A stretch of DNA of 64,000 nt from the NCBI RefSeq assembly GCF_964204865.1, contig NC_135264.1, positions 12,958,001-13,022,000 of the forward strand, written 5' to 3'. Positions within the stretch are counted from its first letter, which is position 1. Each line of letters begins with the position of its first letter. Source of the stretch: Styela clava (taxonomy: Eukaryota). The translations under genes and the position numbers were made by a program. The notes under the pieces were generated by a model. The model did not search any database, was not told the origin of the DNA, and worked only from the letters and a program-made list of their open reading frames with translations. Below, in pieces: positions 18,337 through 60,734 of this stretch.

Positions 18337-18440
18337 ATGAGAAAAGGAACCTAACAATAATAATTTATATTGCATTCGGCATAGTATATCTGGCAACCCC
18401 GTTAAATGCTGACCAATGCAAAATTCCTCCACCTTTAGAA
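18337..18440 (+). pseudogene. Second dead duplicate of lipocalin-B exon 1
   Basis: IYIAFGIVYLATPLNADQCKIPPPLE is out of frame with ATG AGA AAA GGA ACC TAA. Confidence 0.75.
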
Positions 18441-23148: not shown

Positions 23149-25475
23149 CACGTTTTAAAAACGATCTTGTCAAAAACTACGAACAAATAACACAATTACT
23201 ACACAATATTGATTTCTCCATATTCTAGATCTAATTCAGCATTTGTGTATTGTGGCCATTTTCACAACACAACGCAGGTACTTCTTAGTCGGTGTGGCAA
23301 AACTATTTTTGCATATGTTATTCCCAACTGACCACGTCATCAAAAAATTACGACACAGTAACGTAATAAGGCCCTCCAAACTATACTAACTGTCATCCAA
23401 GACGCGCAGACGATCATCCAAAATTGAGCAAGCCATTTCTCTCGTTTTCTCGTCGTAACGATCTCGATATGAGAAAGATCGCTGGCGTTATTGAGTTCGT
23501 TATCGTTGGCAAAAATGCCACTTCGGGCGATTGTAGCTATACTTTGGCAATCTTTTCGACGTGATTGTGAGTTCGTAGTGACGTAATCTTCGGATGACGG
23601 AGCAAGGTGGGGGTTAGGAATAACATATGCAAAAATGATTGTGACACGCCGAAGAGAAGTTTTTACGCCGTTTAGTGAACATGCGCCATATATTGTAATA
23701 TTATTCAGTAATATATTCCATAATAAAAAAGTAATAAAGTCTTCCTAATTAAACAGCCTAAATACCTGTTTTAGAACTTTTTCCTGAATCAAGCGTAGCT
23801 GCAGATGTAGCCAGATAATTAGCTTTAGATTCAACTCTTTTATGGCTAATTCGAAAAACATTAGGTTGAGAGTATTTCCTTCAATTAATTTGGAAAGGAA
23901 CCCGAACACGCTTTGTCGCAGGAGAAGTTGAAAGCTGCAAGCGTCATATCACGAAAGCATATTTTTTCATAGTGTTTAATTTTATCAAACAGATAATACC
24001 TCTCATTATTTTGGGCAGCATGAGAAGAGACTTATAATTCTAATAGCAAGTTTTAATACAGAAAGTGTTTTTGACGTACGAATCTTCGCACGTTCATTGT
24101 TATATAGAATAGAGCATTGCTTTAAAGACGGTATAACTGAAATACAGGTGATTCCTCACGATCTAACACAAAACGCAATTTGTGGGTATACTTCACACAC
24201 AACTTTAAATTAGAAATAAAAAGACAGTGAAATAAACTTTGACCCCACGTAAAATAAATAATTGAAAAACCTTTTCCAAGTCAATGGATTCTTATCACTG
24301 TCTACGTCAACTGTACTTAAAAACCTATGTCAATATTCGCCCAAAGGGTTTATTTTTATTATGAGGATATTACCGCCCTTCCTAGACATGACATAAGATC
24401 ACATGATACAGAACAATTAGTTTATATTCAATGTTTGCGTATGAAAGATAGAGAGTGCTTTTATATATTAAAAACTCGACAAAAACAATTTCTTCACCAT
24501 CTGTTCTGGAAGAAATTTTTGAATTCGTAGTAACGATGTGGAAGTAGCAAATATTGGTATTAAAGTTGGAGAAGAGGTGAAAATTCGAAGTGTAATATTA
24601 GAATAAATAGAAAACAATGTCAATTTAAATTTTTTATCATATATTGGAATATTTAATCGGACGCACAAGGTGTTTTTGTATTTTCAGCATATATTAACCA
24701 AATCTAATTGCTCTTTTCAATTTATTATCATAACGAACCAAAGTGCAATTGACCTATTCTGATTTGGTCTAGTCTAGACATCTTGAATATTTTATTTTCC
24801 GCGGAAAGACAAACGACAAAGAGGTCCGAACCTTACATAGTATGTAAATTAGTAAATATTATTTTTTAATTAAATTGAAAAACTTTCTGTGGAAATATAT
24901 TTTATAACATCATTTTGATATAAATATATAAATTCTTTCATGTATACTTATACTGCGATAAATATATACTTACAAAAAATATTTATCAGACTATCAAATC
25001 GATTAGATATAACAAGAAAATAATATTAATAAGAAAAGAAAAGTAAAAATAGAATATTAGTCTATATAGCCTACATAAGCTGAGAGAAAAGTTGAGACAT
25101 ACAAAAGCTCCTGAACGCAATACATAAAATAGTATGCACTGTTCAATTTAAACTAGAGAATATAGAATATAAATTATTTTTCTTATAAATAGAGGGATCA
25201 AAAATAAAAAAAACTCAAATGACTTTTAGTTTTGCAAGTTATTTGTGACACTTTGTTTATGACAAAGCCACGTGTTTAAACTATGAAATAACTGCGTGCT
25301 ACCGCCGAGCCGCAAAGCTTTTTAATAGAATTTTCACAGGCTTGTTTAGGTATTACAGAAAATGAGTTACTAGATTCACTAGAAGGTAAAAGGAAGTTGA
25401 GCATAGCTGACATATGAAGTGATGCACACACGGCAACGATGTTAATAAACATGAGGTTCAACAGTTGTATTTGAC

Positions 25476-39200: not shown

Positions 39201-40200
39201 TTGAAAACAATTTTCTATACATGGTTTCATTCATTATTGAGATTTTGGCACCCAAATCAATTAAAAGCTTGGTTTCTATACCATCAATCATTAAAGAACA
39301 ATGTTTAAAAATACCATTAACAGAATCACTGTTATTTTTAACAGAAAATACATTTTGCACATCATCACTTTGTTTTTGTGATGGCAACACTTGTCTTGTA
39401 GTCTTTTGTTTCAAAGACCTACACATTTTCATGAAATGATTTCTTTTGCCACATGCATGACAAATACGATTTTTAGCAGGACAATTCCTACTATATGAAG
39501 CATGAGAATTTGATCCACAACAAGTACAATGTTGTTTAGCATATGATGAATTTGCTTTTTGATTTTTCCATTGATTGTGATATCTTTGCCTTTGAATTCC
39601 TTGAACAATAGGATTTTCTTCTTTTTTGAACTTTGGTTTTCCATTGAAATTGGTTTCTTTCTGAATACGATGTGATTCTTCATGAGCAGTTTCAATTTGA
39701 CAAGCCAGTTTTACTGCTTGATCCAAAGTCAGTGTATCAGGTTCCATGAGCAACCTTTCTCTAATTCTTGGTGAGATGGTGTGTTCGATTATTTGACCAC
39801 AGATCATATCATCTGACATATCCGCAAAATTACACTCTGACACTATTTCTCTTAGTGCAGCGACATATTCTATTATTGACTCACCATCATGCTGTTTTCT
39901 ATTCCAAAATAGATGTCTTTGCATTTTTACACTGTCTTTTTTACCAAACTGCTTTTCTAAAGCAGCAACTGCTTGTTCATAAGTATCTGTGTCTGATAAC
40001 GAAACAAATATTCTTTGGCCTTCAATGCCTAAACAATGCAGTAGAATTGCACGTTTTTTATCAGCAGATACATTTTCCTGATCAAGTCCAGTGGCTTTCA
40101 TATACGTTTCAAAGCTATTGTACCAACGTTTCCAAGGTACTTGTGGTTCACCTGGACTTTGCAAGAAACATTGCGGTGGTGGTAAATGTAATTCAGCCAT
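36241..40200 (-). CDS. Gag-Pol polyprotein, 1319 aa
   Basis: Twin zinc knuckles CTCCGSNSH...C / CHACGKRNHFMKMC, protease LIDLGA, RT (LCVDLR, KLDL, PYGL, NIDD), RNase H TDAS, integrase HSGH...CQPC / DVFG / SDNG / ERFNRVLK. Confidence 0.97.
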   Translation of the reverse strand: MAELHLPPPQCFLQSPGEPQVPWKRWYNSFETYMKATGLDQENVSADKKRAILLHCLGIEGQRIFVSLSDTDTYEQAVAALEKQFGKKDSVKMQRHLFWNRKQHDGESIIEYVAALREIVSECNFADMSDDMICGQIIEHTISPRIRERLLMEPDTLTLDQAVKLACQIETAHEESHRIQKETNFNGKPKFKKEENPIVQGIQRQRYHNQWKNQKANSSYAKQHCTCCGSNSHASYSRNCPAKNRICHACGKRNHFMKMCRSLKQKTTRQVLPSQKQSDDVQNVFSVKNNSDSVNGIFKHCSLMIDGIETKLLIDLGAKISIMNETMYRKLFSKYKLKPTTQKLCGYGGSSIESIGVIDLPNIQYGNETIDVFSFFVTKKGVSLMGVDLFDRLNFKVTCNGATVNSIDFRAKYAKVFTGLGKVSKFQHDPMVDHTVKPISQKLRRLPLSVRASVSAELKRLEDNDVIEKIETSPWISNIVIVPKKSNEIRLCVDLRQVNMAIIPDKYPLPTMTELTSKFHSSTVFSKLDLRRSYEQVPLAKDKRYLTAFITHDSIYQYKRIPYGLCSAPSCFQKILSMILKDCENTVNNIDDVIVHGINQADHDEKLDKVLRKLAEYNLTLNVDKCQFSKNCINFIGYKISGSGVLPLESNVESILNIPMPKNKKELQSFLATTNFYLKFVQNYANVAEPLRKLLRKDIPWEWTDLQSNAVNKLKESIASPPILAHFNPNAQTIVTTDASGYAVGAVLSQIDRQGNEKPVAFASKTLSNTERKYSTCEREALASIYACEHWHIYLYGRNFILRTDHEALKSLLSTSGSGHRPLRIYRWTDRLLQYNFKVEHVSGSKNEVADMLSRLVPDDVKESENKDDSDIFEINLDGLVTKEDLEEESKIDPVFQEVVKCLQNGWTFPISPDVAVFYKLRHELSVWNDVCLARGSRAIIPSQLRKRVLEMAHSGHPGMVRMKQRCRENVWWPRLNAQIEDFVRNCQPCAMSGKSIKPAEPPLQSIPWPSEPWKDISIDVFGEMQIAPVKDRFAVVINDLHSKWPEVALTSNVTSTYLINILEGLFARWGIPESITSDNGSVFVSYEFKHFLAKHGIKQKLCALYNPTSNSITERFNRVLKEGLKTHLREGKTVGKAIQIILQNYRATPHALTGKSPAELMTGRKMRLSLECLKPSNTETNINIPKMQKEIAIRQQKSKLYTDDKRHAKVPIFEVGDWVRIKRPIRGHKFKSSLSNPHKITRKVGPATYKLEDGSIWNARRLVRSYQHSFQNENDFHVETFGFNNEDIANLRQSPRNARRNPSRNRRLPSYLQDYELG

Positions 40201-43174: not shown

Positions 43175-46100
43175 TTATGCCTTTTCAGCGTAGAAAAACC
43201 CCCACTTTTGATCTCCTTTACCACATCGTCGTAATTTATCGTTCCAACCAGTTTTAATCGAGTCAAAATCTTCAACGGAAAATTTCTAAAAATACAATTT
43301 ACGTGTGTGGAAAAGTTTATAGGTTAATGGTGACTACTCATCGAACACAAAATATAGAGCATTACTCTACTGATCATAGTAGAACATGCAGGTATAACGA
43401 TACATTTATGGAATATTGGATTATATAAGCTGAATCTTATTTAGACTATTCTTTCACGATTGGATATTTAAAATTGAATAAATATGTTACCTTTGCAAAA
43501 TCGCCTTTTTTCCTGTCGAAAAGTTGCAACTCTTTTTGTAGAATGGACACAAACATATCAGTCTTATCAACCGCTTTGACATTCGTGAAGCCAGCGTTTT
43601 GAAGTTCCTATAAAAATCAAATATTTTGAGTAGTAATATGTAAACGACAATTAAAATGAAGAAGTTCATGACATACGTACCTGGCCGTATTGATCGACCG
43701 TCAGTAAGAAATATCCTCGCTGTGCAACGTAATCTTTGAATTCTTGAGAATGTTTATCATGCGGGCCACATACATAATCAGTTATCAATACTTTGCCTCC
43801 TGGTTTCAACCATTTCTGTGAAAGACATGATTGAATTGTAAATTACAATTCATGTACAGGTCTAAAGCATGGAGATGGCGCAATTATAAGAGGTGTCTAT
43901 AGTCCACACCCTCGCTTGGAATAAGGCGTATTAAAACACTCAGATACTTAAATGAGGCTGGGCATTTCGAACCAAATCGAATAGTAAATTATTAGAACAG
44001 ACGCCATTTTGTTTTTGTATTCGTCCGCCGGAGGTCGAATGAATCCCTCAAATTTTTTTCTTGACGCCATATTTTTAAAATGCAATTCTGACATATGACT
44101 CTTTTCTTCCATAGTTGAGTTATTGGTGAACCGTGTTTTCATTGTGTGTAAACGCTCAGCCAACTACCTTAGTGATGGATTCCATATTTTTAGGAATTCA
44201 TGTGCCTGGAGAACCCATCACAATAAATATTCACATACAATTAATATCAAGATTCATTTTGAAAAAATATTCGATCCGATTCTGAAATCATCAGGTATTT
44301 AAAAATGCGCAGACTCATTTGTAATCAAACAAACGATAAGTTCACCCATCATTTTATATAATTTTAACGTGTGGATCCAGGACTCGAACCTGACAGTTCG
44401 TCCCACAGAATACAAGAATTTTGCATACGAAAAATTGAGATAGATTTTAAAGCATTAGAGAAACCGTATACCATTTTAGGTGGGCTGAAAAATTGTTAAT
44501 TTGAATTTATAACGAGATAAATAGTATTCAGTTCAATCCTATAGATTATAGAAGATAGGAAGCTAATGAGACAGTCTAATTTGATAGCAAGAATTGGCCT
44601 CAAAATAGCCAACAAGAATGATGGTCACTCATAATCGCTAGAATTAAATGACCGACGAAGCCGTAACGCGAACAATTCTGCAACGACATTTAGTCAGTAA
44701 CCGCACATATTTAATTATAGATAAAAACTGATAATCTTTGACAACGTACGTCGTACACGTGGCAAAACAAGAAAATAGGACACCAAATAACTACTGAACC
44801 AATTTTGAAGACTAGTGCAAACAAATAGGAAAGATTAAATGGCGCCTATTGAATCAATTTTACCAAATTTCGTTCATCCAAAAATGTGAGATAGCGGCGA
44901 ATGGGCGAGCATGCGATATTTGTCGATCATAATATCTAAACGTAAAATGGCCGCCTTGCCACAATCGTCGATAATTGTGAAGTACAATACTAACAATGCG
45001 GTTTGTATCAAGCTGGTGACAAATTAGCCTCGTAATCTTTTTGTATATTCTGTTTACAGATGTTACATAACATTTAACAACGCCGCTCCATATTACAGGA
45101 AAAGCAAACATTGCGTAATTGTTTATACGGCCTATATTGTTATCTCCAGCTGTTTTACCGCAAAATACACATCCGACGACGTTGGTACAATAAAAATATG
45201 GGGCAGGAAGGATGGGTAGCTTGTACATAAGCGCTACCAACCACGCCATTTTGGCATAGATACTTTTATAAATAAATTATAATAGAGGCCCTCTCGTTAT
45301 CGGGACCTAATAGTACTTAATGCACTAAGTGTAATAAATTCGGTAGGCAATGCCGGACCGGCAAGATTTCAGCCCTTACAAAATAGTAGCTTATTACTTA
45401 TATATATATATATTGTATCGCTTGGACAGGGTCCTGTTCGGAGCGAGAAGCTTGGTTAAACTCCGTAGAAAAAAATGTACTTACATAAAAATTCGCGAAC
45501 AGTTGATCTTTGTGCTTGATATGCAGAATTGTATCGCGACTGTATATCACATCGAATGCGTCTTCAGGATATTGTATCTTAGTCGCATCTGCCACTTCGA
45601 AGTATACCTTAATAATAATACAATGATTATTACATTATTCAAGAATAAAATATAAAATATTTGTAACAGAAAACACCATTACACATACTTTTGGAATTTG
45701 ATATTCCCTCTGACGTTCAATCGCGATTCCGATCATGTTCGATGATAAATCGATGCCAATGACTTCAGCCCCAAATTCCTGTAAGAAAATATGTAAGCTT
45801 TTAGTTGATAGCACAATACTCGTGTTTTTGCTATAAATGCTTAATTGTCTTTGAATAAACTGTAACAGCAAACTTTTGGGCGCTCCAGAAGTGTGTGTAC
45901 CAATATGGAGGTAATTGATTTTGTTCGCCTACTTTACATCAAGTTGTGTGAAGGGAAGAAACCCGATGGTCAGGGGGTATATTCACTTGACTAGCACATA
46001 CAGTGCCCAAACTCGTAAATCGTAATAGAACTGGAATGATGAAAATCGGAATAAAATTATGCCCTAACCCCAACCTGGTACACACACGCCAGGAGTCACA

Positions 46101-49100
46101 AGGACTTTCAAGAAATCGTGTCGGCACCTATGTGATATGAAACTTGATCCAGGTTTACACGAACAGAAAGCGAAAGGACGCGAACAGAGAGCGACTCGCT
46201 GGTAGTAAATTCCAACACAAATATACGTCACCTACCGATGGCTAGAAAAGCCTCTTTGGAGCGAGGTAATAATTTCTGTAAATAAAGCATCTGAGTAAAC
46301 AATTTTACCCTGCCCATGTGGAAAGCACTCCCTCCGATTCCGCATCCCACATCCAACACCTTCTGGCCTTTCGTCAGTCCCAATGAGCCACAGAATTCCT
46401 GTATGAACAACAGTATTTTAATTAATCATCTAGTCTTCCTCGTGCGAAGTTTATTAATCCCAGCAGACTCACGAAACGATTCCCTAAAATGATATTTACA
46501 CAAACCTGGGTAGTCGAGTGTCCTCCTGTACTGATATAGTCTCGTCCAAATATTTCTTCATAACGCAAAATTCCATTCAAACTGTATTGCTTCTGATCAA
46601 GGAATATTTGGAACGTTTCATATCCATGATATTCCGCTGAGTCCCGTTCGGCCGGTTCCATCAGCCAGCAGATTTGGTTGTGGTTATTTTTCATCTAATA
46701 GTAATTAAAAAGTACATTTCTAGCCTAATGTTCTACCAGTATGCTGAGGTGACCGTACATTTGAACCCATGTACATTTAAACCCATGCGTATATCCACGG
46801 GTTCAATCTATATGCGGGTGCTAAAACCCATGGGTTAGGGTTAGTATGGGTTTAACTATCCGTGAAACAAAAAAAATTCCATAGGTGCAATAGCATACAG
46901 GTGCAATTGTCATGGGTTCAAATGTGCGTGGGTTCAAATGTAATGGAACCGTATGCTGAAGTCTTACTTTCATACTGTAATTCTAGGTACGACTACAAGC
47001 CATATTCGAAAAGGGTTGCTAAACGGTGAGCACAAAAGTTACCATTGTTTTCTTTCAATATACTAAAAAAGCAGAGCCCAAAATGTACAAATAAAAGCAA
47101 GGTAAATCGCTCAAGCGTGGTACAAGGTATTCATCAAAATATTTTGCTTCGGTATCATGTAATTTGCTTATAAACCTGCCAGATATAAAAAAAAAAAAAA
47201 AAAAAGTACCATGATATAAGTCTCAACCGATTTTGACGTAACCAGATCAAATCCGTAAGCTTTTCCATTTTTGCTCTTATTCGTTACGGAACTGACGAGA
47301 TTGGTGTATTCATTTGGACTGCGGTAGATCGTAGGATTGAATGACCGTTCTTTGTTACCTGTGAGTGTATAATGGTCAGTAGATAAGATACAACAACCGT
47401 CAGTGGACATTCCGAAATGAGTTGCATGATGATTTTCTAGATCGGATATGAGACGAATCGCTGGTAAAAAAATTAGTATTTGTATTGTATCTACGGAATT
47501 CACGTATGGTAAAGTTTGTTGTAATTTCAGTTCAGGACTTAGGATGTAAGCGGAATCATTGGAATCATATTTGAACGCACCCAAGCGAAAGGATTTTCGT
47601 AGTACTTTACTGTAATATTACAAATTCTAGTTCTCCTTGTTTAATGCAAGATTCAGACCAATTTGAAAGCTGGCGAATCGGACTGTTTCCGACCCTGTTC
47701 TCATTGATTAGCCTCAAATCAGCAACTCATTCGTTATTTTTCTTGATAAATTAAGTGTCTGCCAAAAAAATAAATTGCATGTGCCAACCTGATTGTTGGT
47801 AACAAGATTCACGGAAAAATAGTCGTCCAGTAGGTTTCAACCATTTTAACATTTTATCAATAAGTATTCTGATGTCATTGTCACCGAGATACATCAACAA
47901 CCAGTTCGAAAATATCAAATCCAAGCTGTAAAGAATAAATATTAAATCTGAAATAGGATTCATTTGTTTAAACTATTTTAGATATTACGTTGCGTTATCC
48001 CTCAAGCGAATTCTACTTATGAAAGGTCCCGAAAATTTGAAGGCTTTAATTTGGTGTTCGAAAGACGATGCCCCGAGTGCTCTGTGTTGCATCTACATAA
48101 GGTCCCGTTATATGGCATCTGAACAAGTTACACATATGTTCAAACATGTTTTGTATATAGCAAACGTCTTCAATACCATACCTGTTTTCTTCAAATTCAA
48201 GTTCTAAAACATTTTTGCACAAAAATGTAACGTTTTTGTTGTGGCCGTTCACTTCTTGATTCTTCTTAACAAAGTTATCCATGAAATCAACGGCGACTAC
48301 TGATTTGACTTTTTTCGACAATATTGATGTAAATCGTCTGCAATGAAATTCGTATTAACCTTGTCAAATCAAAAATATAACCTCCTGCAACCTCTTTATC
48401 CATACATACGACACATCGGGCTATAAGACGAAACGGATTTAAAGCCGGTACCGGTTGTGAGTGTGGTCAATAAAGAAGTATCTGATCCTTAATTTGAGGG
48501 CACCAGCTTATAAGGCTCAGGATCAATTTTTGAGGAGAAAAGAGATTCAAAGTGCGCATTATAGTCCGCAAAAAGGGGAATAGGATTTACATATTTATCC
48601 GGGGGAGAGGAAGGCCGCCAAGACGGCTCAATCATATGGCGAACTACGGCCTCTCGTCCGGTTACCAGTTCATGTCGGGTATGGGATTACTTAGCCAGTT
48701 ACTTAAGTTTCTCTGACTGTCAGAACCCACTCTAAGCGAAAAAAAGTATTAATCACCCCACAAACTATAATCATACCCAATTCCGGCTCCGAGTTCTAGT
48801 ACATCTTTCCCTTCGTAATCCGGTAAATACTTGATTATTTCATCGATTTCAATATCACTTATTTCTGCTGCTTGCGTGTCTAACATCATCTCTGTGACGT
48901 CACCATTTTGTGAATGTTGTTTCCAGAATTTTGTCATCTGCGTCCGCGTTTCTATACGGAAAGAGAATGAAATATAAGATAAAAAAGTTTAATATACTTG
49001 TATCGAATGTATTACTGATGCAAATACACATTATGTCTCGCTGGAATATTAAAGAACTCTGACGAATAAACTGGTGGAGAAACGAATGTGAAAATGAATT

Positions 49101-49586
49101 TTCCAATCTACATTTCCGAAAGATTGGAATTGTGCTATAGTGGAATCGTCATAATTCGCAGTTACGCAGATATTTTTTCGGCACCGACGAACATTCATTT
49201 ATTTTACAATTTTACCTGGAAAAATATCTTCAGATAAGGTAATACAGCAATCAATAACCTAAACGGTTCATTGAATTTCTTGAATACCAGTACAAACCAA
49301 TCAATATTTATCGAACTACATTTGACAATGACTATCATTCAAAAACCAATACAACGTACCAAAAATGCACATTTTAGCGTAATTTTGAAGTATTTTCTGC
49401 AAAAACAAAACTATATGCCTATCAGACGCTAAAGACTGCTTTGTGTCTCAAAAGCAAAAACCAATAAAGATTTCAACGTTCACAAAAGACGTTTAAAATT
49501 TAGGTGACTCCAGCAAATTTCATCTCACCTCCGTTTGTTTCAGAATGCACTCCATTTGTTGTTGTTGTTACTTGAGTAGTTGCCAT
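43175..49586 (-). CDS. pmt: Phosphoethanolamine N-methyltransferase, two-domain (plant/vertebrate type), 509 aa; exons 49586-49529, 48951-48777, 48337-48182, 47925-47789, 47358-47210, 46694-46506, 46398-46309, 45778-45689, 45607-45485, 43815-43681, 43607-43491, 43285-43175
   Basis: 1530 nt in frame. Domain 1: [39 protein letters not shown]. Domain 2: [10 protein letters not shown]...[47 protein letters not shown]. Confidence 0.95.
46748..46950. mobile_element. MULE-like MITE (same family as 6209-6410)
   Basis: Perfect 9-bp TSD gtatgctga; same internal sequence. Confidence 0.88.
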
Positions 49587-51724
49587 GCTAATAATTTTCC
49601 ACGGAATTTTTCCAAGAATAGCTACACGTTATAAAATGCTTCTCGAGTACGAGTAAAGCTACGACTTTGGCACTTCTTTCGTTTGCTCTTTGGGAGCATG
49701 TGCCACACTACCACTCCAAAACAAAAAAGAAAGGGATGCAGTCTAAATGTAGAAAAAAGGAATATATTATACAACGTTAGAAAGTTAGACTTCGACATCA
49801 AAAAATTGAAATGCGCCGCTATGGAAATGGATTATTTAATTGCGCTAGCTTGATTAAAAGTGTTTATACCTTGAGGGAATAATACCAAGCACGACAAGCT
49901 TCGCTGTTTATAAGGTTATCATAATTATGATCCATTTATTTCGTGGGGTCGAGTGTTAATAGCGGGCTACATATACAAACTTCGTTTAAAAATGTCTTTA
50001 CTGTGCCCTATGGCATGTCAATGTTGATAAAAGTACATGCCACATTCTCTATCGATATTTTTTGGAAACTGTCACAATTTCTTCTGTAACTGGCAACTTC
50101 CATTTGCCTTTGTCCTGTTGATCTGATATTGTTAACCTGGAATCAATCTATCGACACTCGAATAATACACAGCGATTGTTGAGCGTAATAAATCGATTTC
50201 TCTCTACTATGAGACACTGCAGGACTGCGCTATGTCATTGTCAAACACTGGGGTTCTGCATACTAACAATGACGTTGATGTGTAAAATTTAACATTTGCG
50301 TATCGTATTCTGACAGTTTTCTACGTTGGAGGCTAACAAATATACCGTAATTTCTGTTTGTGGGAAGATAACTGCTTACTTACTGATGCTGTTATTCATT
50401 TTCTAAAATCTAGACGACTATTGGACAATAACAAAACCTCTTTAACGCGACAGACTTGTTTTCAATCTTTTAGAATCTGCGGAAATTTGACACATTGCTG
50501 GTATGTAATTGGAACAAAATTTTATCCGATAAATTAAGTTTTTTTTTAAATTATTTCCTATGTGCGCTATGTATACATGAAGTCTGTTTCTACGCTGTAT
50601 GTAATATATCGTTACACACTGTACTCATAATGACATATCTAAAACTGAATCCAATTGGTCTTGTACGTTTAAGTTGAAGGCGGTACTTAACTCGTGTAAT
50701 ATTGCATCATTGTAATTACAGAAATTCATCGTGATTCTAACACCTCTAGCTATTTTACCTTCAAACAATAATTATTCTAAGTATAAAAGTGAAACATGAT
50801 AAATGTGTTATTGTGCCTATTCCTTTCGTCTGCGACGTAGAAAATCCCAGAACTTTAGTCATCCCCATGAGGCGTTTCGGTTTTAGCTGAGTCATTAGTC
50901 GTGACGCTATGAAAATTTAATAACAAAGCCAGCGTTCGCGCCCATAGGGTTATAGCTTTAAAGTGACACTCTGCTTCAGAGACTTTAAAGTGTATTCGTA
51001 CGCGGCTACAGTACACCACAACAATACAAATGTACAGGTGATTAAAAATGCAAATTCTACTATTGTTGCTATGCATCAATGCGCTCACGCAGTATGCTCA
51101 GAACGATAGTGTGATGAAATGAATCATTTATTATTTCCGCTTTGACGCTTCCGGGTTATGTTATTCTCTTCGGACAAATGAAAATGAGTTGTATAGTGTG
51201 ATGTTCTGGCTTACTGTACTCACATTTCTTTATAAAAGCAATATATTAGTGAAAAATTAGCTCTATGTCGTGAGTAATTTACACGGAAATTCGAGTCGTA
51301 CCAGACATGACTCTGCCAATTGGTTTAAGGATAGTCTCTCATCACTAACTTTGTTTGATTACCAACGGTCCTTATATACTCAAGACGAGTAGAAAAAAAA
51401 CGTGAGTCATCCTTCTAACGTGTTGTCATACTTTATCAACTATGCAGTATCTAAACATATCTTGCTCAACATATATTTGCTCTCCTTGAAATGAGTACCT
51501 ACCTACTCATCTCAAACGAGGTTCCAAAATGTAGATAGCTCTCGATCTCAAATCATTCTGGTACTTTTCCATGCCACGACATTACTGCACAAAACGAGAG
51601 AGCCTTTGTAATGCGTGGACGACCACCGCAGAATTTTTACGAACACGTAATTCGTTAAATACCTCATAAAATACTTAGGAGAATCAGGTCGATACGTTCG
51701 GACACGTATAACACTGAATACTGG

Positions 51725-52153
51725 TATTATCGGTATCGGTATCGGTATTGGTCACTTTGTCGGCATCTATAATTGTATGGGTATCGGTATCTGATAAAAT
51801 AGACCGATATTTCCGAATTAATGCAAATTCAAAATATATACTATGCAATTAATTCGAGTAGTATTTTAATGAACACTTCGTAGGGAGTCTAGCGACACAC
51901 CATTCGCGCAGTTGAGTCACAAATACGGATTTGAAGTTTCGCGCGTCCGCTTGCTCTGAGATATATGTTTTCCTAGTTGAAAAAATGCTCGCGTTGCGTA
52001 CTGTTTGCAGACAAATATTTTATTCCGACTGCTCGGTACATTCAGAACATGGTACATACATTGATTAAATTGCATACTATCGGAATATAAGCAATTTAAA
52101 TATCGGTATTAGCTCCTTTTCGTCGGTATCGGTATGATATCGGTACATCTCTA
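51725..52153. mobile_element. Partial hAT-like MITE with ATCGGT subterminal repeats
   Basis: (ATCGGT)n clusters at both ends; right end ATCGGTACATCTCTA; left TIR not found. Confidence 0.5.
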
Positions 52154-53858
52154 GTTTACACCTTGATAAAATATTCATTCAAAATTGTTTTTCATCTCGA
52201 ATGCTACATTTCGTACAGTAGCTATGTATGCTACTAAAAATGCAACACGAAATTATTGTGTTGATTGCAACTTTAGTTAGTTTTGGCGCCCTTCCAATGC
52301 CACGTGGCAATGGAAAGTTGATGCAACATCAAAAGTCACGCCACTCCGAGGCAAGTGATTTGACGTCACTCAGCATATAGTTTACTAAAGAGCAAAGTGT
52401 CACTTTGTGACACAAGCATTAATTGATTATAGACTACACTAATTATGCCATAGCATAAAAAATTATCGAGTTATGGACTTTTGCATTGGCAATGACGAAT
52501 ATATCTTTTGAAATATCACAATACAATGATCAATTAATTGGTTCCAATATTTGCACTTAAACCTTAGATGGAAGGAAAGGAGCACTATAAATGTATTTAT
52601 TGGCTTTGTTGTGGATTTCAAAATAATTACCATATTTTAGACGAAACTGAATCTAATATAGCAAATACGCTTTTTGTATCTGGATCATTATTGGTTGTTC
52701 CTGACGGTAAGGTAATTGCTTATTTTGTTATACTATAAAATATTTTTGAATTCCTAGACACATTTCATAAAAATATTATATATATTTTTTATGACACGGC
52801 CATAAATTACAATATCGAATATGAGTCGTCTATTAAAACACACATCAAAGTATTGTTAGTCCATGCCTAGCTTGGAAAGCTATTTCTAACTAGATAATTT
52901 GATTTCAAGTCTTGTAGTAATTGCAATGTTTAGTATTGGATGGCTTTTCACGACAAACTTTCCAAGTATATATTTAATGGATAGTTATTCGCAGTTTACC
53001 ATCAAAATGGAAAAAACTAGAACCGATATTACCACACTTTCTCAAATACTTTTACTCTTGAGTAAAATTAAAAAAGAAATTTCATGATGTCATGCAATGT
53101 TGTTTGCGACATATTATCGATTGAAATCTTGTGATCGGTCACCACTATTGGACATGAAAAATTTGTTTGAAGTTTGAAAAACAGCATAAATTTGTTGACA
53201 GAACAACAAAAATACTCGTGTATTCTTAATACAGTCAGGACAATCAGATTTTAGGACAATTGTATTTTTCGCATCTTAATAAGCTGTCATCCAAATTAGC
53301 CATACTGACTGAAAATGAATAGAAACTCCAAAAGCAAATGAAAGATACATTCGCCACAATTGCTGATGCATTGCATATTTATGGTGATTTTGCAGAGTGG
53401 AGCTGTACAACTTCATCACACAATTTCGTAGTAATAATACAGATAAGTATTCGTTAGACCTTTCATTGGATGTCTCTGTTTGTTTTGACTGAGGCGCAAT
53501 AAATATTCTGGGTAGATATCAATTATTACTTTCTTGTCTTTTCGTGAACCGTTGCTGTGTTTACGGAATATTATACCATATATCACGCGTTCACCTCGTG
53601 TCCCTACCAGTAATTTTCCACGTTCTATAATACAACTACCTATTACACAACTTGCATTGGTGTTGTAATATTTTCTACTATATTGCATAATTGTTATCAG
53701 CGGACTTTAGTCATCACTTTATTCTTTGCCAACGTGTTTTCAGTAAAATGATAAATTAGAAACATAGAATGCACGATATCATCGTTGCTAAATGCTATAC
53801 GTTCATATAAGTGTACGTCCATGTAATATATGCAATGCCAATCTAATAAGCTAGAGTG

Positions 53859-54167
53859 CCTGGTATGGGCAAACTACGGCCCGCGGGCCAAATTCAGCCC
53901 GTTGGGTAATTCAATCTGGTCCGCCTGATGCTACCACAACCAAACTAAAACCAAATTTGGATGTTTTAGATAAGAATAGCTCAAGGAGTTTGTTGGGATT
54001 GCGATTAAATTTGGTTTTGACACGAGGCATATTGTTTTCCATTTTTGCTTTTGTAACACTGTAAATATTGTTCATAAAATGTAATTTTTTATGTCACACC
54101 TACATGGCCCGTCAGTTTAGGCGGGCATAAATTTTGGCCCTCGAACCGAAAACCTTGCCCACCCTTG
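53859..54167. mobile_element. hAT-Charlie-like MITE
   Basis: TGGGCAAACTACGGCCCGCGGGCC...TTGCCCACCCTTG; TSD ctagagtg/ctagaatg. Confidence 0.75.
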
Positions 54168-55224
54168 CTAGAATGTTATCATAACATCATATGAAAATTC
54201 TGGCTGTTTGGCGGATCTTCAATATTCATTTATGATAAAACAATATCAAATTTAATGTTTAATTTTTGCATTTTCATTTCGTCATATTTACAAAAATGGC
54301 TCTACAGAATGAGGTAAATAAAATAAAAAAGACAATATGCAAAAAATTTATAAGATAATTAGATCTCATACTAGTGGGCTAGATAATTAACTTAATAACC
54401 GTATCTTGTCAGAACAAAACACATTTCTGGTGTGAACCTCAGGGGTTCTCAAACTGGGGCACACGTACCCCCAGTGTTGCATTCCGACTTTTCAAGGAGT
54501 ACTTTACATCAACTTTAGGGATATTTGTTCCATAATTTACAATCTACCTTAAAATATTTGCAGCCCCTAATGTTAATAATATGAATACTTGAGTTTAGGA
54601 ACTCCTTGGAAAGATATTTTCACCTCAGCTTTTGCTACAACTACAGTAACTACCAAATCTACTTTCGCAGTTCACGTGACTTATTTAGTCCAATCACAGA
54701 ACGCAAAACAAAACAGCTGATTGATCGCTCGAAGTTACGAAATCTCGGAAGCAAATACCGCCAATACACAGATAATAGCTGATACCACCTAAACATGATA
54801 TTTGTTGGCTTGTTGCTAAAAAACATATGATTATTACATATGATAAAAACATATGATTATTACATATGATTGGCTGTCGCTTTTGTATAAGCGTGGATTG
54901 CATTCATATCAATAACTTTGTGTGCTTTGATTATTACGAATCACGCAGATTTTCATATTGAATCAAAATAATTATTTTTAAAGTTCTTAAGAAATGTAGA
55001 AATGATAGGTTGCCTAGCAATAGAAAAAAAGTTGAACTTAGCAGTCGAAATCATGAGCAATTCTTGAGGTTATACACCAGCAACTGAAAGTTGTCTAAGC
55101 GATACCAATAAACATGAAATTCGGGAAATCCTGACCTAGATTAGAAATTAAAATGCGATTGGGAAACACTTTGATAGTAGGAAAAAATAAACTGAAGAAT
55201 TGGCAATAAAACAACAAAAGCATT

Positions 55225-58200
55225 TCATTCGTTTTCTACTTTTATTCCGTGATCTGCTGGAGCTCCATTGTCGCGTTCAGTCGACTTCAACAACCAAAAT
55301 ATTTGGTTTGAATTATTCTTCATCTAAACAAGAGAACAATGCTCAAATATACGGACACGAAAGCCAGTACGCAGTAGTATCAAATCTTTCACAGTGTCGG
55401 TAATCTGACCACCAGATCGCTGAAATGTGATCACGAAAGCTCGGGACGGTGAGCAATTCTTAATTTTGATGACGTCATCACACACACTTCGAATTGAAAA
55501 ACGAGTCCTAGGGAGCCCACAGAAATTTTTAAAATAAATAATAATAGCCATCAACAAACAACAACAAGCTTTAACCACTGAAAATTTCAAATCAATTATT
55601 CGTGTAGTTAAAGAGTAAGGCGATTATTTCACAACAACATTATATATAACAAACGATTTATAGGTCCATTTCGTGTCCAATAAAGCATTAATTAACTTTT
55701 TGGTCATTTTTGGTTAACTATCCTGTATATTAAAGGTAATAGAAATGAATATTTGTTTGAAGTACGTAATTAAATTATCACCAATGTCATAATTAATTTT
55801 TATTAATTAATTAATTTTTCCGCCGTAATGCTGGCTGGTACAGCGAGGCAACAGTAACATTTTTGAATTTTGCAATCAGTACAAACTGAAGCATAACATG
55901 CTATATTGTCTTACTTTGAACATTGTGGTGGGTCGGTCTAACCACGTTACAATTGAATGTTTAGGATATCGGATATTAATTTAGCTCTCTAGGCTCAACG
56001 CGGGGTTGTGTAAACTTAAAAGTAGTGTTTACTAAACTCGAATGAGTTTGGTTTTAGAATCCTGTTCACCAGCAAGTATATATACAAGATAAAGTGTTAC
56101 CCACCTTTTGTGGCGGCCTATAAGTCTTACAGACTTCTCAACAAAAATTAAGAAAAACGTTTGTCATATAATATTATTTGCTATCACCTGAATGTACGTT
56201 TTGATTGAACCTGTCACGACCAATTCAAAACTGATTTGTCTTCCATCCTTATTTGTATGAACGATTTCACTAGTAATTTTTGCATATTCGTCGGGTGTAC
56301 GGTATATTGTAGGATTAAATTGCCGAAGTAGGTTACCTGAATATAAAAGTTCTTTCTGCCAAAAATACACGATGGAACTTACATACAAAAGGAACACATT
56401 GCTGACAATGATAAATATTAGATTGTTGATGAACGAAGACTATCGCACAAGAAACAAGAGAGCTACGCCCAAATATATGGACACGTCTGTTCGCAGTACA
56501 GTACGGTTTACCGTACCGTCAGATCACAGTCTACAAATATATTCACACCAAGCGAAGCAGTACAGCAGGACACAAAATGGCGTCCGAGGTCCGCAGAACG
56601 TTTAATGACGTCATAGCAAACAAAAACAAATCTCACAGAGCTAACAGAAATATTTAAAATGAATATTTTAAATGATGGAGGCAAATAATAACAATAACAA
56701 CATAATATTGAAACGATCGTTACGTCCACTAAACGTGTCCAATAAACTGCAAATGCCACAATGACTATGAAATATTACCTAAACATTCACTTCATTAGAC
56801 TCAATCATACGAAAAAGAACAACAAAGTTTCAAAATAAAATACAGGATGCCATGATAACTATGGAATATAGGACATTTACTTATTGAAGTCAATCATACA
56901 AAGTAAGCTCAACATCAAATTCGAAATAAACCACGAGATGCCACAGTGATTATGACGTATTAGATGGCTCAACAGCGACATCTGTAAACAGGATATGCCT
57001 CAATGACAACGAAGAATGAATGATATGGTATAGTTAAATTTTCAAACAGGACATGGGTCCTTATTCATAAAATATATTTCAAACTGACCTGACTGTTTAT
57101 AGCAAGATTCACGGTAAAATAAACGTCCAGTAGGCCTCAGCCATTTTAACATATTATGGAAAAGTATGCTGACTTCATGGTCATCAAGATACATCAATAA
57201 CCAGTTGGAAAATATCAAATCCAAGCTGAAAAAATATTAATTTAATAATTAAATGGCTGAATTGGATAATATAACATTAGGAATTTGTTAACAACGAAGG
57301 CCAAGACGAAGTAGAATGTCATTTAATTGATACGATCACGATCAGTATTCGCATTATAATTTTGCTTTTTTTGAACTGAGCATTCTTTCTAATTCACTAC
57401 ATTCTTCACAGAAAAATAGCACCAAAAATCAATTTTCGTTAGAAGAAGAACGTTACTTTACACCGAAAAATTTTTGGCCATCAAAAGCCCATTTTTGCAA
57501 CTCACAGATTACCTGTTAGTTTCTAACTCTAGCTCAAGAACATTTTTGCACACAAATTGAATATTCTTGTTATGACCGTTTGTTTCCTTATTTTTGTCGA
57601 TAAAATTCCTCATGAAGTCGACAGCAATGACAGATTTTGCTTTTTCTGCCAATTTTGTCGTGTATCGCCTGTAAAATTAATCACGTGTATCTATCACAAT
57701 TTATTCATACCGTGTTTCCACGAAACCCACCCCTAAGACATAGTCTAAAATTTGAAAATTATTTCAATATAAGCCCACACCTTAAAATATGACCTAGTCA
57801 ATAACGCTAATTTTTTTTTGACCTAGTCGATAGCAAGAAATCTTTCCTGGACGTTTTAAATGATTGATAAATAATCTATGTTTTGCAGTTATTTTGAATA
57901 AAAACGTGTTATTTATAAGTAAATGGATATCGGTTTTCATATTTCGTACATTTGAAAATATCGAAATTCTTTACTTCGTAATTTTATATTTAATAAATGA
58001 AAATATAAAACATCCCCCCGAATATTAGCCCTAGTGTTATTTTTCGGAAGAAAATTGAAATAAGACCCAGTCTTATTTTCGGGGAAACACGCCCATCGTT
58101 TAACTGGGAGATATCAATCCCAATGGTCCGCCATGAGAGCCGTAAAAACACTATAAACACGGCATACTATACTACTAATATATACTATCATTTAGCAGAA

Positions 58201-59430
58201 GTCTAGCAGGTGATCTTCTTAAAATCTTGCCTTTAGAAGCAAAGACAAATTGCTTAAAAATAAGGTTGTGTCATCATCTGGGGCCTAAAACTCGAAGGCC
58301 TTGTTTACTGACCAGGTTATTCCGGGCACCGCTTCTGATAAAAAGTTCATTACACAATTTTCTACAAATAAAAATGACAAAAGTAAAAATAGGGGATTAG
58401 ACAAACAGCGTCAACACTCTCTCCCCAGTTCTCAATCATGAACGCTGTTCGTAGGTTTAAATTCTGACAGTGATAATTGTGTGCAAGTTGAGGATGCACT
58501 TTTTGTTTACGAATGGCGGTTCGTACTACCACAGGCCTATGGGTTTTTCCTCAATTGTTATATAGTTTTGTGTTATGCAAATTAATGTGGATATTGAGCG
58601 AGGGTCACTGTTTTTTTTCGTATATTTAAACGGTTTTTTACCCTTTTCGCTCCGTGCGTAATAATCATGAAAATAATGTCTTACCCGATTCCAGCTCCAA
58701 GTTCAAGAACATCTTTTTCCTTATAATCAGGCAAATAATTCATAATTTCTTTTATCTCAATATCACTTATTTCAGCACCTTTTGAATCTAACAGCATCTC
58801 AGTGACATCGCCATTTTGAGAATGTTTTTCCCAATATGTATTCATTTTGTGGCGACACTGTGACATATCGTATTTTTTAAGTATATATTTATATTCTTTT
58901 GTTACAAGAAAAAAATATGTGAGCAAATTTATAACTAATAGAAAACATGGAAATCATGTAAGATATACATCACCAAAAGTACACGGTTTTTTTATTATTA
59001 TAAAAATTAACAATATTCATTAAAGTTGACGTTTCAACGTTAATTGACGTAGATGTAAGTTTTAAATATATATTGTCAGTGTTTCTACCGTTGTTGTACT
59101 CGTAACATCGTTTATGTATAGCAAATATTTGCAAATTCAACAGAGTTCAGGAAGACTGAAAATCCACTCGATTGTACAAAACTTCCTCATAGCCTCTGTG
59201 TAATGGATGATTTAGCTGACTTGGGTCAAATAATGGAAGGCTACGTTGTTGTCTACGTTGCCTATGATAAGCAAATGAGCCTTTCTGCTGCGCAATATAC
59301 ATAATCCTTGCTATTTGATATGAATAAAGTTATAATGTACTGAATTTTGACATTTATACAATAATCAGTAATTTATTTTTTCACCAATACAGAACGTGCG
59401 AAATTGATTTAACTGCTCTTTAGTTGCCAT
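55225..59430 (-). CDS. Single-domain PMT paralog (N-terminal methyltransferase domain only), 240-265 aa; exons 59430-59385 (tentative), 58895 (or ATG at 58866)-58685, 57668-57513, 57225-57089, 56336-56188, 55323-55225
   Basis: Internal exon sizes 156/137/149 and phases equal those of the full gene; all motifs intact; last exon [32 protein letters not shown]. The first exon is uncertain (begins ATG GCA ACT like the full gene). Confidence 0.85.
55326..55530. mobile_element. AAACAAG-family repeat abutting the last splice acceptor of the short PMT (another copy about 56452-56660)
   Basis: AAACAAGAGAACAATGCTCAAATATACGGACACGAAAGC matches 5388 onward. Confidence 0.65.
57710..58091. mobile_element. 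pogo/Tigger-like (Tc1-mariner) MITE
   Basis: TA|CCGTGTTTCCACGAAA ... TTTTCGGGGAAACACG ends with TAAGACC subrepeats; right TSD lost. Confidence 0.65.
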
Positions 59431-60734
59431 GGCCACATCCTGCACGCATAATATGACCAGAGATCAATCCTCAAATACATGGCATACACAAAAGTCGACT
59501 GTCAAAACCGGTATAGTAAGTCTGTGCTGCGCTGAGCACCGACTTTGTAGAAAGTTCGAAGGAAAATCGTGACGGAAACACAAGGGGGTGAAAAAGTGTG
59601 GCTAGGACTCGAGGCAAATTCGAAAAAAGTGTATATAAACACAACAGCTGTTTTATATTATTATATATATATATATATTATAAATGATGCTATTGGCCGA
59701 GAACGAATACTTAAATGTGACATTAATTTGTGTAACGTTTTGATATAATATATATAGCTCAGTCAATCACCAAAAATAGACTTCACCGAGACGCTGCCAT
59801 TTGATCAGTCTTGTGTGCAAACTGCAGAAAATTTGTTCCACGCCAGCCGCAAATTCCCGTTTGTTTTTCAGTCTATTGAACTCGGCATTTATATCATCTT
59901 TGCCGAAACAACAAGGAAAATACTCATATTTTATTGCAATCACGCTGCTTTCTTCTATCGGAACTGACTGCCAAAGCTACAGGTTTTCTTTTCATAAAAC
60001 AAATTGATGTTTACTAGTCAAGATCTACCGATTGCGGACGACTCATTCGTGTAAGAATATACGACTATCTTATGAATTGGCCTGAATGTCGACCATCGCA
60101 ATACTAATAACATTGTAATCGGAAATTAGTATTTGTGCATAATGGGACATTCAAGATAATTCGATGACCTTCAGTTCAGATTCCCGAGTAAAGGTTAAAA
60201 CGAGTTAATGAAATTACAAACATATTCTTTTTTATTACATATTATGACGTTTTCGCACAATTAGTATTTCGGAGATGTGATCTTTCTTGCAATTGCTGGA
60301 TACGAAATGGAGCTATGGATCGTTTTGTTATTGTCATAATGTTGTTGTTGGTATCTTTTTTATTGTCTCTCCTCGCCTTCTTTTTAACTACTAGATCAAT
60401 TGCTTCGAAACTGTCATTGGTTAAAGATTGTTGTTGTCTCCAGAATCTATTACTTTTATTTATTTCAAAAATTTATCTGGGCTCTATGGGATTCGTTTTT
60501 CACCCAGAAGTTTAGTGTGACGACGGTGTGTTTAGTGTGCATCAGAATTAAAAATGACGTGTAGTGGTTATCATCATCGCCACAGGGCCTGGGACAGCTC
60601 GGGTCTAGTACCGGTACTGGTAATTTACATTAACTGTCTTGTTTTCTAAAAAGTTATCGGGGGGGGGGGGGGGGGGGATAAAACAATTTTTGGGGGTAAA
60701 ACAATTTCCGTGGCCGAAACACTGAAAAATCGTT

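What the first reader, a model, noticed from the sequence alone, without database searches (positions are those of the whole stretch)
55225..59430. Stand-alone N-terminal-domain PMT: an old, conserved half-gene next to the full enzyme
Seen: the paralog keeps exon sizes, phases and motifs ([43 protein letters not shown]) with no stop or frameshift, while silent sites are heavily changed and introns do not align. Its last exon follows the full gene to ERD...HG in the linker, then stops 7 codons later. I found no domain-2 remnants in 49.6-55.2 kb. Known: domain 1 of two-domain PMTs does the first methylation; nematode PMT-1 keeps a vestigial second domain; Plasmodium's single-domain PMT resembles domain 2. 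Inference: a domain-1-only enzyme under purifying selection, an architecture I do not know to be described. It could boost the first step, produce monomethyl product, or act on a new substrate.
Basis: partly seen in the sequence, partly recalled or inferred. Interest (0 to 1): 0.78.

Follow-up and report, generated by a model that had tools for sequence, protein, structure and literature searches.

The report
Expressed half-size methyltransferase gene copy
Next to a normal two-domain gene for making phosphocholine, this animal genome (probably a sea squirt) keeps an old, transcribed, well-conserved copy that encodes only the first of the two enzyme domains, a natural form I did not find described.

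Summary
On the minus strand lie a full 11-exon, 485-aa two-domain phosphoethanolamine N-methyltransferase (F, 48937-43175) and, 6.3 kb upstream, a 5-exon, 233-aa paralog (P, 58845-55225).

- **Structure:** exons 1-4 have the same sizes (161/156/137/149 nt) and phases. Introns do not align. No domain-2 remnant lies between the genes. The genome holds no other copy.
- **Extent:** P covers the whole first methyltransferase domain (MT1) and the linker. It stops where MT2 would begin.
- **Expression:** spliced contigs from three RNA-like runs (two studies) join P's exons at the predicted junctions. They run colinear through the stop into a 3' UTR. None joins F.
- **Selection:** pairwise dN/dS is about 0.11 with saturated synonymous sites. 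A hand count against four solved homologs gives 9 P-derived and 11 F-derived changes. The open frame is far longer than chance allows.

My best reading is a stand-alone MT1 enzyme that makes phosphomonomethylethanolamine. Activity is inferred, not shown.

Not testable here: orthologs in other species, the whole-protein fold and database models. Look-ups in the scan's earlier notes found none on this gene pair. I class it as a new variant of a known kind, of moderate interest.

The parts
58685..58845 (-). P exon 1 (coding part, 161 nt): start codon, N-terminal substrate-lid residues (W5, M17, L18) and SAM motif I (LELGAGIG)
   Evidence: Identity to F exon 1 is 39 of 53 aa. It aligns to residues 13-64 of Arabidopsis PMT chains 5wp5 and 5wp4. 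Contigs X1 rec 7 and X2 rec 12 splice it to exon 2. An in-frame ATG 21 nt upstream (58866) could add 7 residues.
58846..58898 (-). P 5' UTR, minimum extent seen
   Evidence: Contig X4 rec 19 covers 58698-58898 and X1 rec 7 reaches 58876. The true 5' end is not mapped.
57513..57668 (-). P exon 2 (156 nt): post-I motif (VIAVDF) and motif II region
   Evidence: Identity to F is 34 of 51 aa. Pfam Methyltransf_25 E 3.3e-4 and Methyltransf_11 E 9.8e-4, both below the curated cut-offs, as expected for a single exon. It aligns to 5wp5 residues 66-113. It is spliced to exons 1 and 3 in X2 rec 12 and to exon 3 in X4 rec 16.
57089..57225 (-). P exon 3 (137 nt): [12 protein letters not shown] and motif III ([16 protein letters not shown])
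   Evidence: Identity to F is 34 of 45 aa. The match to 5wp5 residues 120-164 has E 4.6e-18. Lowest synonymous difference of the four exons (pS 0.43).
56188..56336 (-). P exon 4 (149 nt): FNPTIYR and the C-terminal strands of MT1
   Evidence: Identity to F is 22 of 49 aa. It has the same gapless register as F exon 4 against 4krg residues 181-223. It is spliced to exon 5 in X2 rec 9.
55225..55323 (-). P exon 5 (99 nt with stop): last MT1 element (NQIFWLL), linker, six novel residues, TGA
   Evidence: tblastn with F exon 5 matches P residues 1-19 (63% identity, E 5.8e-5). F exon 5 residues 2-12 align to Arabidopsis 216-226, and residues 27 onward are the start of MT2. Four listed polymorphisms here are all non-synonymous, and there is an in-frame 3-nt insertion allele.
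55037..55224 (-). P 3' UTR, colinear with the genome (minimum extent). Low-depth contigs continue to about 54485.
   Evidence: Contigs X1 rec 3 (55037-55325), X2 rec 9 (55072-55323 joined to 56188-56262) and X4 rec 13 (55165-55323). Further contigs lie at 54485-54824 (X1) and 54868-55013 (X2). Depth is zero at 54100-54293 in the three RNA-like runs. The only AATAAA in 54300-55300 lies at 55246-55241, inside the coding sequence. The 3' end is not mapped.
43175..48937 (-). F, the full two-domain PMT gene. 11 exons: 48937-48777, 48337-48182, 47925-47789, 47358-47210, 46694-46506, 46398-46309, 45778-45689, 45607-45485, 43815-43681, 43607-43491, 43285-43175.
   Evidence: 485 aa. Exons 1-4 match MT1 and exons 5-11 match MT2 of solved PMTs. 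It is the only copy of domain 2 in the genome.
46506..46694 (-). F exon 5, the undivided exon that holds the end of MT1, the linker and the start of MT2. The duplication breakpoint of P falls inside its counterpart.
   Evidence: Residues 2-12 are the end of MT1, 13-26 are a variable linker (Arabidopsis is 5 residues shorter), and 27-62 are MT2. Plasmodium single-domain chains begin to align at their residues 4-13 and 30, by chain.

Best explanation
P is a real, transcribed gene. It arose by an old tandem duplication of the 5' half of the neighbouring PMT gene, with the downstream breakpoint inside exon 5, in the inter-domain linker. It encodes a 233-aa protein: the complete first methyltransferase domain (MT1) plus the linker and a short unconstrained tail. 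Selection has kept it about as strictly as MT1 of the full gene. Most likely it works alone as a SAM-dependent enzyme that adds the first methyl group to phosphoethanolamine. The product, phosphomonomethylethanolamine, would then be finished by MT2 of the full enzyme, so P adds capacity, or separate regulation, at the committing step.

Shown: structure, splicing, colinear 3' end, constraint, domain boundary.
Inferred: catalysis and substrate.
For: STRUCTURE: identical exon sizes and phases, and canonical splice sites.

COPY NUMBER: there are only two MT1 copies and one MT2 copy in the 377-Mb genome, so the spliced contigs cannot come from a retrocopy.

TRANSCRIPTION: contigs join exons 1-2-3 (X2 rec 12), 1-2 (X1 rec 7), 2-3 (X4 rec 16) and 4-5 (X2 rec 9) at the predicted junctions. 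Unique intron stretches have zero depth in the three RNA-like runs. Contigs run through the stop to 55037, 55072 and 55165.

CONSTRAINT:
- pS 0.705, pN 0.194, dN/dS about 0.107 over exons 1-4.
- Differences by codon position are 50, 30 and 96, each of 201.
- Random placement of the 176 substitutions leaves the frame open in 10 of 20000 trials.
- 9 P-derived versus 11 F-derived residues among 69 differing sites, counted by hand.
- Listed polymorphisms in exons 1-3 are 2 synonymous and 2 conservative (R/K, D/E). The 4 in the tail are all non-synonymous.

DOMAIN: every exon matches the MT1 part of Arabidopsis PMT1/2 and nematode PMT1 best. P ends where MT2 begins. Three of the four HcPMT1 pocket residues named in PMC10269165 (Discussion passage) are kept: W, M, W.

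PRECEDENT FOR ACTIVITY WITHOUT MT2:
- Spinach PEAMT lacking the C-terminal domain does only the first methylation, and wheat PEAMT keeps activity without it (PMC12473159, Discussion passage).
- Nematode PMT1 forms of 341, 350 and 372 aa are active on phosphoethanolamine (PMC10269165 section 5 and a passage of section 6; PMC4805780 passages).
Against: No assay and no protein evidence exist.

Contig depth is low (2-6), and the runs are labelled 'RNA?' by guess. Their RNA nature rests on the spliced contigs themselves.

Pairwise dN/dS averages both lineages. The relative-rate count uses distant outgroups, only 20 informative sites, and was made by hand.

No ortholog could be sought, so the age rests on saturated synonymous sites and unalignable introns alone.

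PMC12473159 (Introduction passage) cites the Arabidopsis structure paper for the view that both domains must be intact for catalysis. I could not read that paper.

The fourth pocket residue (HcPMT1 Met27) is Leu in P but Met in F and in all four solved chains.

Both P and F have Ile where all four solved MT1 chains have His (NPTHYR). I do not know the role of that His.
Confidence: 0.6

Rival explanations
1. P is a functional stand-alone MT1 protein whose job has shifted. It may methylate another amine, release the monomethyl product for a use of its own, or bind and regulate the full enzyme without catalysis.
For: The pocket residue equivalent to HcPMT1 Met27 is Leu in P only (PMC10269165 Discussion passage). 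Exon 4, which carries part of the substrate side of the domain, is the most diverged (22 of 49 identical, pN 0.36). Long retention beside an intact full gene suggests a non-redundant role.
Against: Met to Leu is conservative. Change is symmetric between P and F (9 versus 11), so P shows no burst of change. SAM motifs and three of four pocket residues are kept. The simplest expectation from truncated plant enzymes is ordinary first-step activity (PMC12473159 passage).
Confidence: 0.22
2. P is an alternative 5' half. Transcripts from P's promoter splice from exon 4 or 5 into the MT2 exons of F, giving a full-length chimeric enzyme. The short form would be a by-product.
For: Same strand, 6.3 kb apart. 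P exon 4 ends in phase 0, like F exon 4, so a join to F exon 5 would stay in frame. Contigs drop rare variants, and I could lay only 54100-59900.
Against: In 3 of 3 RNA-like runs the contig at exon 5 continues colinear past the stop. The exon 4 to exon 5 join of P is laid on both sides in X2 rec 9. No listed joint or contig leaves P for sequence outside it, though 256 loose ends and 17 joints were not shown. Depth falls to zero at 54100-54293. F has its own start codon and first four exons.
Confidence: 0.08
3. P is a transcribed relic, a partial duplicate without function that has simply not yet decayed.
For: Low contig depth. The C-terminal tail is polymorphic, with four non-synonymous variants and an indel. 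No orthologs were examined.
Against: Synonymous sites are saturated and introns unalignable, yet there is no stop or frameshift in 702 nt (10 of 20000 random trials stay open). dN/dS is about 0.107. P is no more derived than F (9 versus 11). All splice sites are intact and used.
Confidence: 0.08

Closest known systems
Plant-type di-domain phosphoethanolamine N-methyltransferase (PEAMT/NMT; Arabidopsis PMT1 and PMT2, PDB 5wp4 and 5wp5, 491 aa)
   Same: Each P exon has its best solved match in residues 13-226 of these chains, the MT1 half. SAM motifs I, post-I and III are present. The neighbour F has the full di-domain layout.
   Different: P has no MT2 at all. It ends in the linker. P has Leu for the second Met of the MMLD motif. 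P and F both have Ile for His in NPTHYR.
Nematode PMT-1 (Haemonchus contortus HcPMT1, PDB 4krg, 466-aa chain; 6wlf, 446 aa)
   Same: An enzyme whose only active domain is MT1 and which does only the first methylation (PMC10269165 and PMC4805780, passages). P exons align to its MT1. Shorter forms of 341-372 aa are still active (PMC10269165 section 5 and a passage of section 6; PMC4805780 section 3.1).
   Different: Nematode PMT-1 keeps 100-250 residues after MT1. No passage I read uses that word. P keeps about 20 residues. In nematodes MT2 sits in a separate PMT-2 gene. Here it sits in a full di-domain gene next door.
Engineered N-terminal half of spinach PEAMT
   Same: MT1 without MT2. It is reported to catalyse only phosphoethanolamine to phosphomonomethylethanolamine (PMC12473159, Discussion passage citing the original work, which I did not read).
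   Different: A laboratory truncation, not a natural gene.
Plasmodium single-domain PMT (PDB 3uj6, 4mwz, 4iv0; 258-284-aa chains)
   Same: A natural one-domain PMT of similar size.
   Different: It corresponds to MT2, not MT1. These chains align to F exon 5 from residue 29-31 onward. They match P exon 3 only weakly (E 0.005-0.26, against 4.6e-18 for Arabidopsis MT1). It does all three methylations (PMC4357015 abstract).

Membership tests
PMT/PEAMT, MT1 (N-terminal) domain | Class I SAM-dependent methyltransferase motifs I, post-I, II and III | tested here: met
   [14 protein letters not shown] and [15 protein letters not shown] are aligned with the same motifs of 5wp4, 5wp5, 4krg and 6wlf. Pfam Methyltransf_25/11 hits on exons 2 and 3 fall below the curated cut-offs because single exons were scanned.
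PMT/PEAMT, MT1 (N-terminal) domain | Closer to MT1 than to MT2 of di-domain PMTs | tested here: met
   P exon 3 scores 51.6 bits against Arabidopsis residues 120-164 (MT1) and 13.0 bits against 350-388 (MT2) of the same chain. Exons 1 and 2 match residues 13-64 and 66-113.
PMT/PEAMT, MT1 (N-terminal) domain | Residues that narrow the phosphobase pocket in HcPMT1 (Trp14, Met26, Met27, Trp123; PMC10269165 Discussion passage) | tested here: inconclusive
   P has W, M, L, W. F and all four solved chains have W, M, M, W. Three of four are kept, and the fourth is a conservative change.
PMT/PEAMT, MT1 (N-terminal) domain | [quoted passage not shown] | not testable with these tools
   Needs a recombinant enzyme assay.
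Di-domain (plant-type) PMT architecture | A second, C-terminal methyltransferase domain (MT2) in the same polypeptide | tested here: not met
   P stops six codons after the linker's HG. There are no MT2 remnants in 49000-55225. Transcript contigs are colinear through the stop. P is therefore not filed under this architecture. F is.
Nematode PMT-1 type | Active MT1 followed by a long C-terminal region (solved chains of 446-466 aa) | tested here: not met
   P has 233 aa, with about 20 residues after the last MT1 element.
Plasmodium-type single-domain PMT | The single domain is homologous to MT2 | tested here: not met
   Plasmodium chains match P exon 3 at E 0.005-0.26 only, and align to the MT2 part of F.

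The most novel reading that the evidence does not exclude
A chordate relative has kept a free-standing MT1 enzyme for a very long time because it does something the di-domain enzyme cannot. It may make phosphomonomethylethanolamine as an end product, for monomethyl lipids or signalling. Or, with its altered pocket (Met to Leu), it may methylate a different phospho-amine. That would be a natural split of the three-step pathway, arrived at independently of nematodes.
Probability: 0.2. Interest if true: 0.65.

Novelty: new variant of a known kind. Interest (0 to 1): 0.45.

Why it matters
PMT is the plant, nematode and Plasmodium route to phosphocholine, and it is a drug target because mammals lack it. 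Its presence in a close relative of vertebrates is barely studied. My searches for PMT together with Ciona or ascidian found no relevant paper.

A natural MT1-only enzyme would show that the first, committing methylation can be run and regulated as a separate protein without any second domain. It would be a ready-made minimal MT1 for structural and kinetic work. It is also a clean example of a partial gene duplicate that survived as a single-domain enzyme.

If it turns out to be only an extra dose of first-step activity, it is an ordinary duplicate of modest interest.

Tried and rejected
LED NOWHERE

- **, collected (search of protein representatives, P exon 4):** 2 proteins at E up to 0.001 among 1.84 billion. 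Both are unrelated repeat-like matches (3084 aa with 13 stretches; 691 aa with 7). No PMT appeared, not even a self match. Exon 4 was too short and too diverged a query. This used the only job.
- ** (protein-atlas search, P exon 1):** only unnamed short clusters. Useless for a 53-aa piece.
- ** (search for homologous proteins, open frame around F exon 4):** 1 candidate, none scored.
- ** (search for homologous proteins, open frame around P exon 1):** 1 of 1 candidates scored. P0003 is 76 aa, 52% identical, from an ENA metagenome contig. It is an exon-1-like frame of some other organism that ends at the same GAGIG boundary. It says nothing about orthologs of P.
- ** (literature):** badly framed. 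Generic terms satisfied min_terms, so they gave nothing usable.
- the three structure and review papers by Lee and Jez (2013, 2014, 2017) are not held. MT1 residue roles therefore come only from one passage of PMC10269165.

CONSIDERED AND REJECTED

- **Assembly gap:** no N in the window. DNA and RNA contigs agree with the assembly at the truncation point.
- **Processed retrocopy as the source of the spliced contigs:** there are only two exon-3 copies in the genome, and both have introns.
- **Operon with F:** 6.3 kb between the genes and zero depth at 54100-54293.
- **A donor at AAA|GTAGAA inside the tail:** contigs read straight through it.

NOT DONE, BY RULE

I never joined the exons. So there was no whole-protein homology search, no exact look-up of the gene model, no fold prediction and no codon-model run on a joined alignment. 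Counts were summed per exon instead.

I asked for no supplementary files. Figure 1 of PMC10269165 (alignment with marked binding residues) is not held and might name more MT1 residues.

The species name (Styela, from earlier notes s1-822886 and s1-822895) was not tested.
Full report
ANATOMY

Both genes lie on the minus strand.

The full gene F has 11 exons from 48937 to 43175 and encodes 485 aa. Exons 1-4 and the first 12 residues of exon 5 make the first methyltransferase domain (MT1). Residues 13-26 of exon 5 are a linker. The rest makes MT2.

The paralog P lies 6.3 kb upstream. Its five exons are 58845-58685, 57668-57513, 57225-57089, 56336-56188 and 55323-55225. They encode 233 aa, or 240 if an in-frame ATG at 58866 is used. 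Exons 1-4 have identical sizes (161, 156, 137, 149 nt) and phases in both genes. All P introns are GT..AG. The window has no N.

CHECK OF THE OBSERVATION

- Amino-acid identity per exon is 39 of 53, 34 of 51, 34 of 45 and 22 of 49.
- Exon 5 keeps 12 of 32 without gaps.
- By tblastn, only the first 19 residues of exon 5 match (63%, E 5.8e-5).
- blastn between the two regions aligns exons only. The introns share nothing.
- tblastn of every F exon against the window finds no domain-2 remnant in 49000-55225. The best hits for exons 6-11 have E of 0.9 or worse and are out of order.
- In the whole 377-Mb assembly an exon-3 query finds 2 places, both in this window.
- A domain-2 exon (exon 9) and F exon 5 each find 1 place.

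So there is no third copy, no displaced 3' half and no retrocopy.

EXPRESSION

One search for sequencing runs gave five runs with 9-14% of the words of the 5-kb stretch, which is what exons alone would give. It also gave four DNA runs with 77-81%.

I laid three of the first kind (X1 and X2 from one study, X4 from another) and one DNA run (X6) on 54100-59900.

**Exon joins seen:**
- 1-2-3 in X2 record 12 (58684-58828, 57513-57667, 57087-57225).
- 1-2 in X1 record 7.
- 2-3 in X4 record 16.
- 4-5 in X2 record 9 (56188-56262 joined to 55072-55323).

All joins are at the predicted junctions.

**Intron depth.** Unique intron stretches (55846-56039, 58174-58561, 58950-59337) have zero depth in the three runs, while the DNA run covers them at about 47. 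This is why I take the three runs for RNA, although the tool only guesses so.

**The 3' end.** In all three runs the contig over exon 5 goes on colinear through the stop codon, to 55037, 55072 and 55165. Low-depth contigs continue to about 54485, and depth is zero at 54100-54293. No listed contig or joint links P to sequence outside it. However, 17 joints and 256 loose ends were not shown, and contigs drop rare forms. Contig depth is low (2-6). Contigs cannot give levels or ends.

SELECTION

**Pairwise dN/dS.** Over exons 1-4, with whole codons only and counts summed per exon, pS is 0.705 and pN is 0.194. This gives dS about 2.1 (saturated), dN 0.22 and dN/dS about 0.107.

**Codon positions.** Differences fall 50, 30 and 96 on codon positions 1, 2 and 3, each of 201.

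**Open frame.** If the 176 observed substitutions are scattered at random over F's exons, a mean of 6.8 in-frame stops arise. Only 10 of 20000 trials stay open. P has none, and no frameshift.

**Relative rate.** A pairwise ratio averages both lineages, so I compared each paralog with four solved homologs. These are Arabidopsis PMT1 and PMT2 (5wp4, 5wp5) and two nematode PMT1 chains (4krg, 6wlf), using the alignments printed.
- The rule: a site counts as derived in one paralog if the other paralog's residue stands in at least two outgroup chains and its own in none.
- Of 69 differing sites, 9 are P-derived and 11 are F-derived.
- This was counted by hand. Exon 4 had three outgroups.
- P has therefore changed no faster than MT1 of the full enzyme.

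**Polymorphism.** The variants listed and translated fit this picture. In exons 1-3 there are two synonymous and two conservative changes. In the tail there are four non-synonymous changes, plus an in-frame 3-nt insertion in X1 and X2. Thirteen further differences were not shown.

WHERE THE PROTEIN ENDS

F exon 5 against the solved structures:
- Residues 2-12 align with Arabidopsis 216-226, directly after the stretch matched by exon 4.
- Residues 13-26 are a gap-prone linker.
- From residue 27-31 the exon aligns with MT2 of nematode PMT-2 and with the very N-termini of the single-domain Plasmodium enzymes.

P keeps the first element (NQIFWLL) and a linker ending in HG. It then has six unrelated residues and a stop. 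P is thus all of MT1 and none of MT2. The duplication breakpoint lay inside an exon, not at an exon border.

FUNCTION, INFERRED

**Domain identity.** The P exons that give clear matches find their best solved match in the MT1 half of di-domain PMTs. Exon 3 scores 51.6 bits on MT1 against 13.0 on MT2 of the same chain.

**Pocket residues.** A Discussion passage of PMC10269165 names four residues that narrow the HcPMT1 pocket so that only the first methylation is favoured: Trp14, Met26, Met27 and Trp123. By the printed alignments P has W, M, L, W. F and all four solved chains have W, M, M, W.

**Precedent without MT2:**
- Passages of PMC8353235 and PMC10269165 state that MT1 does the first methylation.
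- A Discussion passage of PMC12473159 reports that spinach PEAMT without its C-terminal domain does only the first step.
- The same passage reports that wheat PEAMT keeps activity without that domain.
- PMC10269165 (section 5, read whole, and a passage of section 6) and PMC4805780 (passages) report active nematode PMT1 forms of 341, 372 and 350 aa.

From these I infer that P alone methylates phosphoethanolamine once.

**Against this.** An Introduction passage of PMC12473159 says that integrity of both domains is critical, citing a paper I could not read. Both ascidian copies carry Ile for the His of NPTHYR that all four solved chains have.

RIVALS

- **Shifted or regulatory function.** Supported by the Leu in the pocket and by exon 4 being the most diverged.
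- **Alternative 5' half spliced to F.** In frame and on the same strand, but not seen in any contig.
- **Transcribed relic.** Contradicted by the open frame, the ratio and the symmetric change.

NOVELTY AND LIMITS

In the held library, searches for PMT with Ciona (4 papers held all terms, none on this topic by listing) and with ascidian (5 papers, none relevant) found nothing on a tunicate PMT. Searches showed no natural MT1-only form. The library lacks most subscription journals.

I could not look for orthologs or for an existing gene model. Exons were searched apart, and the joined step was left out. The length window of the protein search excludes full-length kin of exon-sized queries.

Earlier notes of this scan call the genome Styela (clava). 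I did not test that.

VERDICT

This is a real, expressed, long-conserved gene for a free-standing first domain of PMT. It is a new variant of a known enzyme kind, with a plausible but untested first-step function.

Noticed in passing
window 56301-56321 (P) and 47323-47343 (F), minus strand: Both paralogs read FNPTIYR, where all four solved MT1 chains (5wp5, 5wp4 by homology, 4krg, 6wlf) read NPTHYR. A conserved His next to the Tyr-Arg is Ile in this lineage. Its role is unknown to me.
   Followed up: partly
window 57089-57225 versus 47789-47925: Exon 3 has much lower synonymous difference than the other exons (pS 0.43 against 0.75-0.80). The DNA match runs 11 nt into the upstream intron. This could be an old gene conversion or extra constraint on this exon.
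   Followed up: no
window 55458-55651, 56428-56815, 57786-58173: Three stretches inside P's introns are very high-copy repeats. Summed contig depth is 29000-186000 in the DNA run against about 47 beside them. They are also abundant in the RNA-like runs.
   Followed up: no
window 55244-55248: Runs X1 and X2 carry an in-frame 3-nt insertion in P's C-terminal tail, which adds one codon without disturbing the stop. X4 and the DNA run X6 do not.
   Followed up: partly
window 36241-40200, minus strand: One uninterrupted 1319-aa open frame lies 3 kb downstream of F. By eye it carries zinc-knuckle, protease-like, reverse-transcriptase-like and integrase-like stretches, so it looks like an LTR-retrotransposon gag-pol. 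Observed only.
   Followed up: no
window about 8200-23300: Chance tblastn hits recur with a period of about 7.1-7.5 kb (for example 8240/15701/22794 and 8656/16156/23249). This points to a tandem array of large units, probably the 'B paralogs' of note s1-814266.
   Followed up: no
P0003 (76 aa, ENA metagenome contig): An exon-1-like open frame of another organism ends at the same ..LELGAGIG boundary as exon 1 here. The exon 1 border of PMT therefore seems shared beyond this genome. It has Leu where P, F and the solved chains have the first pocket Trp.
   Followed up: no
window 59338-59531: There is low RNA-like depth in X1 and X4, about 500 nt upstream of P's start codon, over a stretch that is also raised in the DNA run. 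It could be an upstream non-coding exon or an expressed repeat.
   Followed up: no
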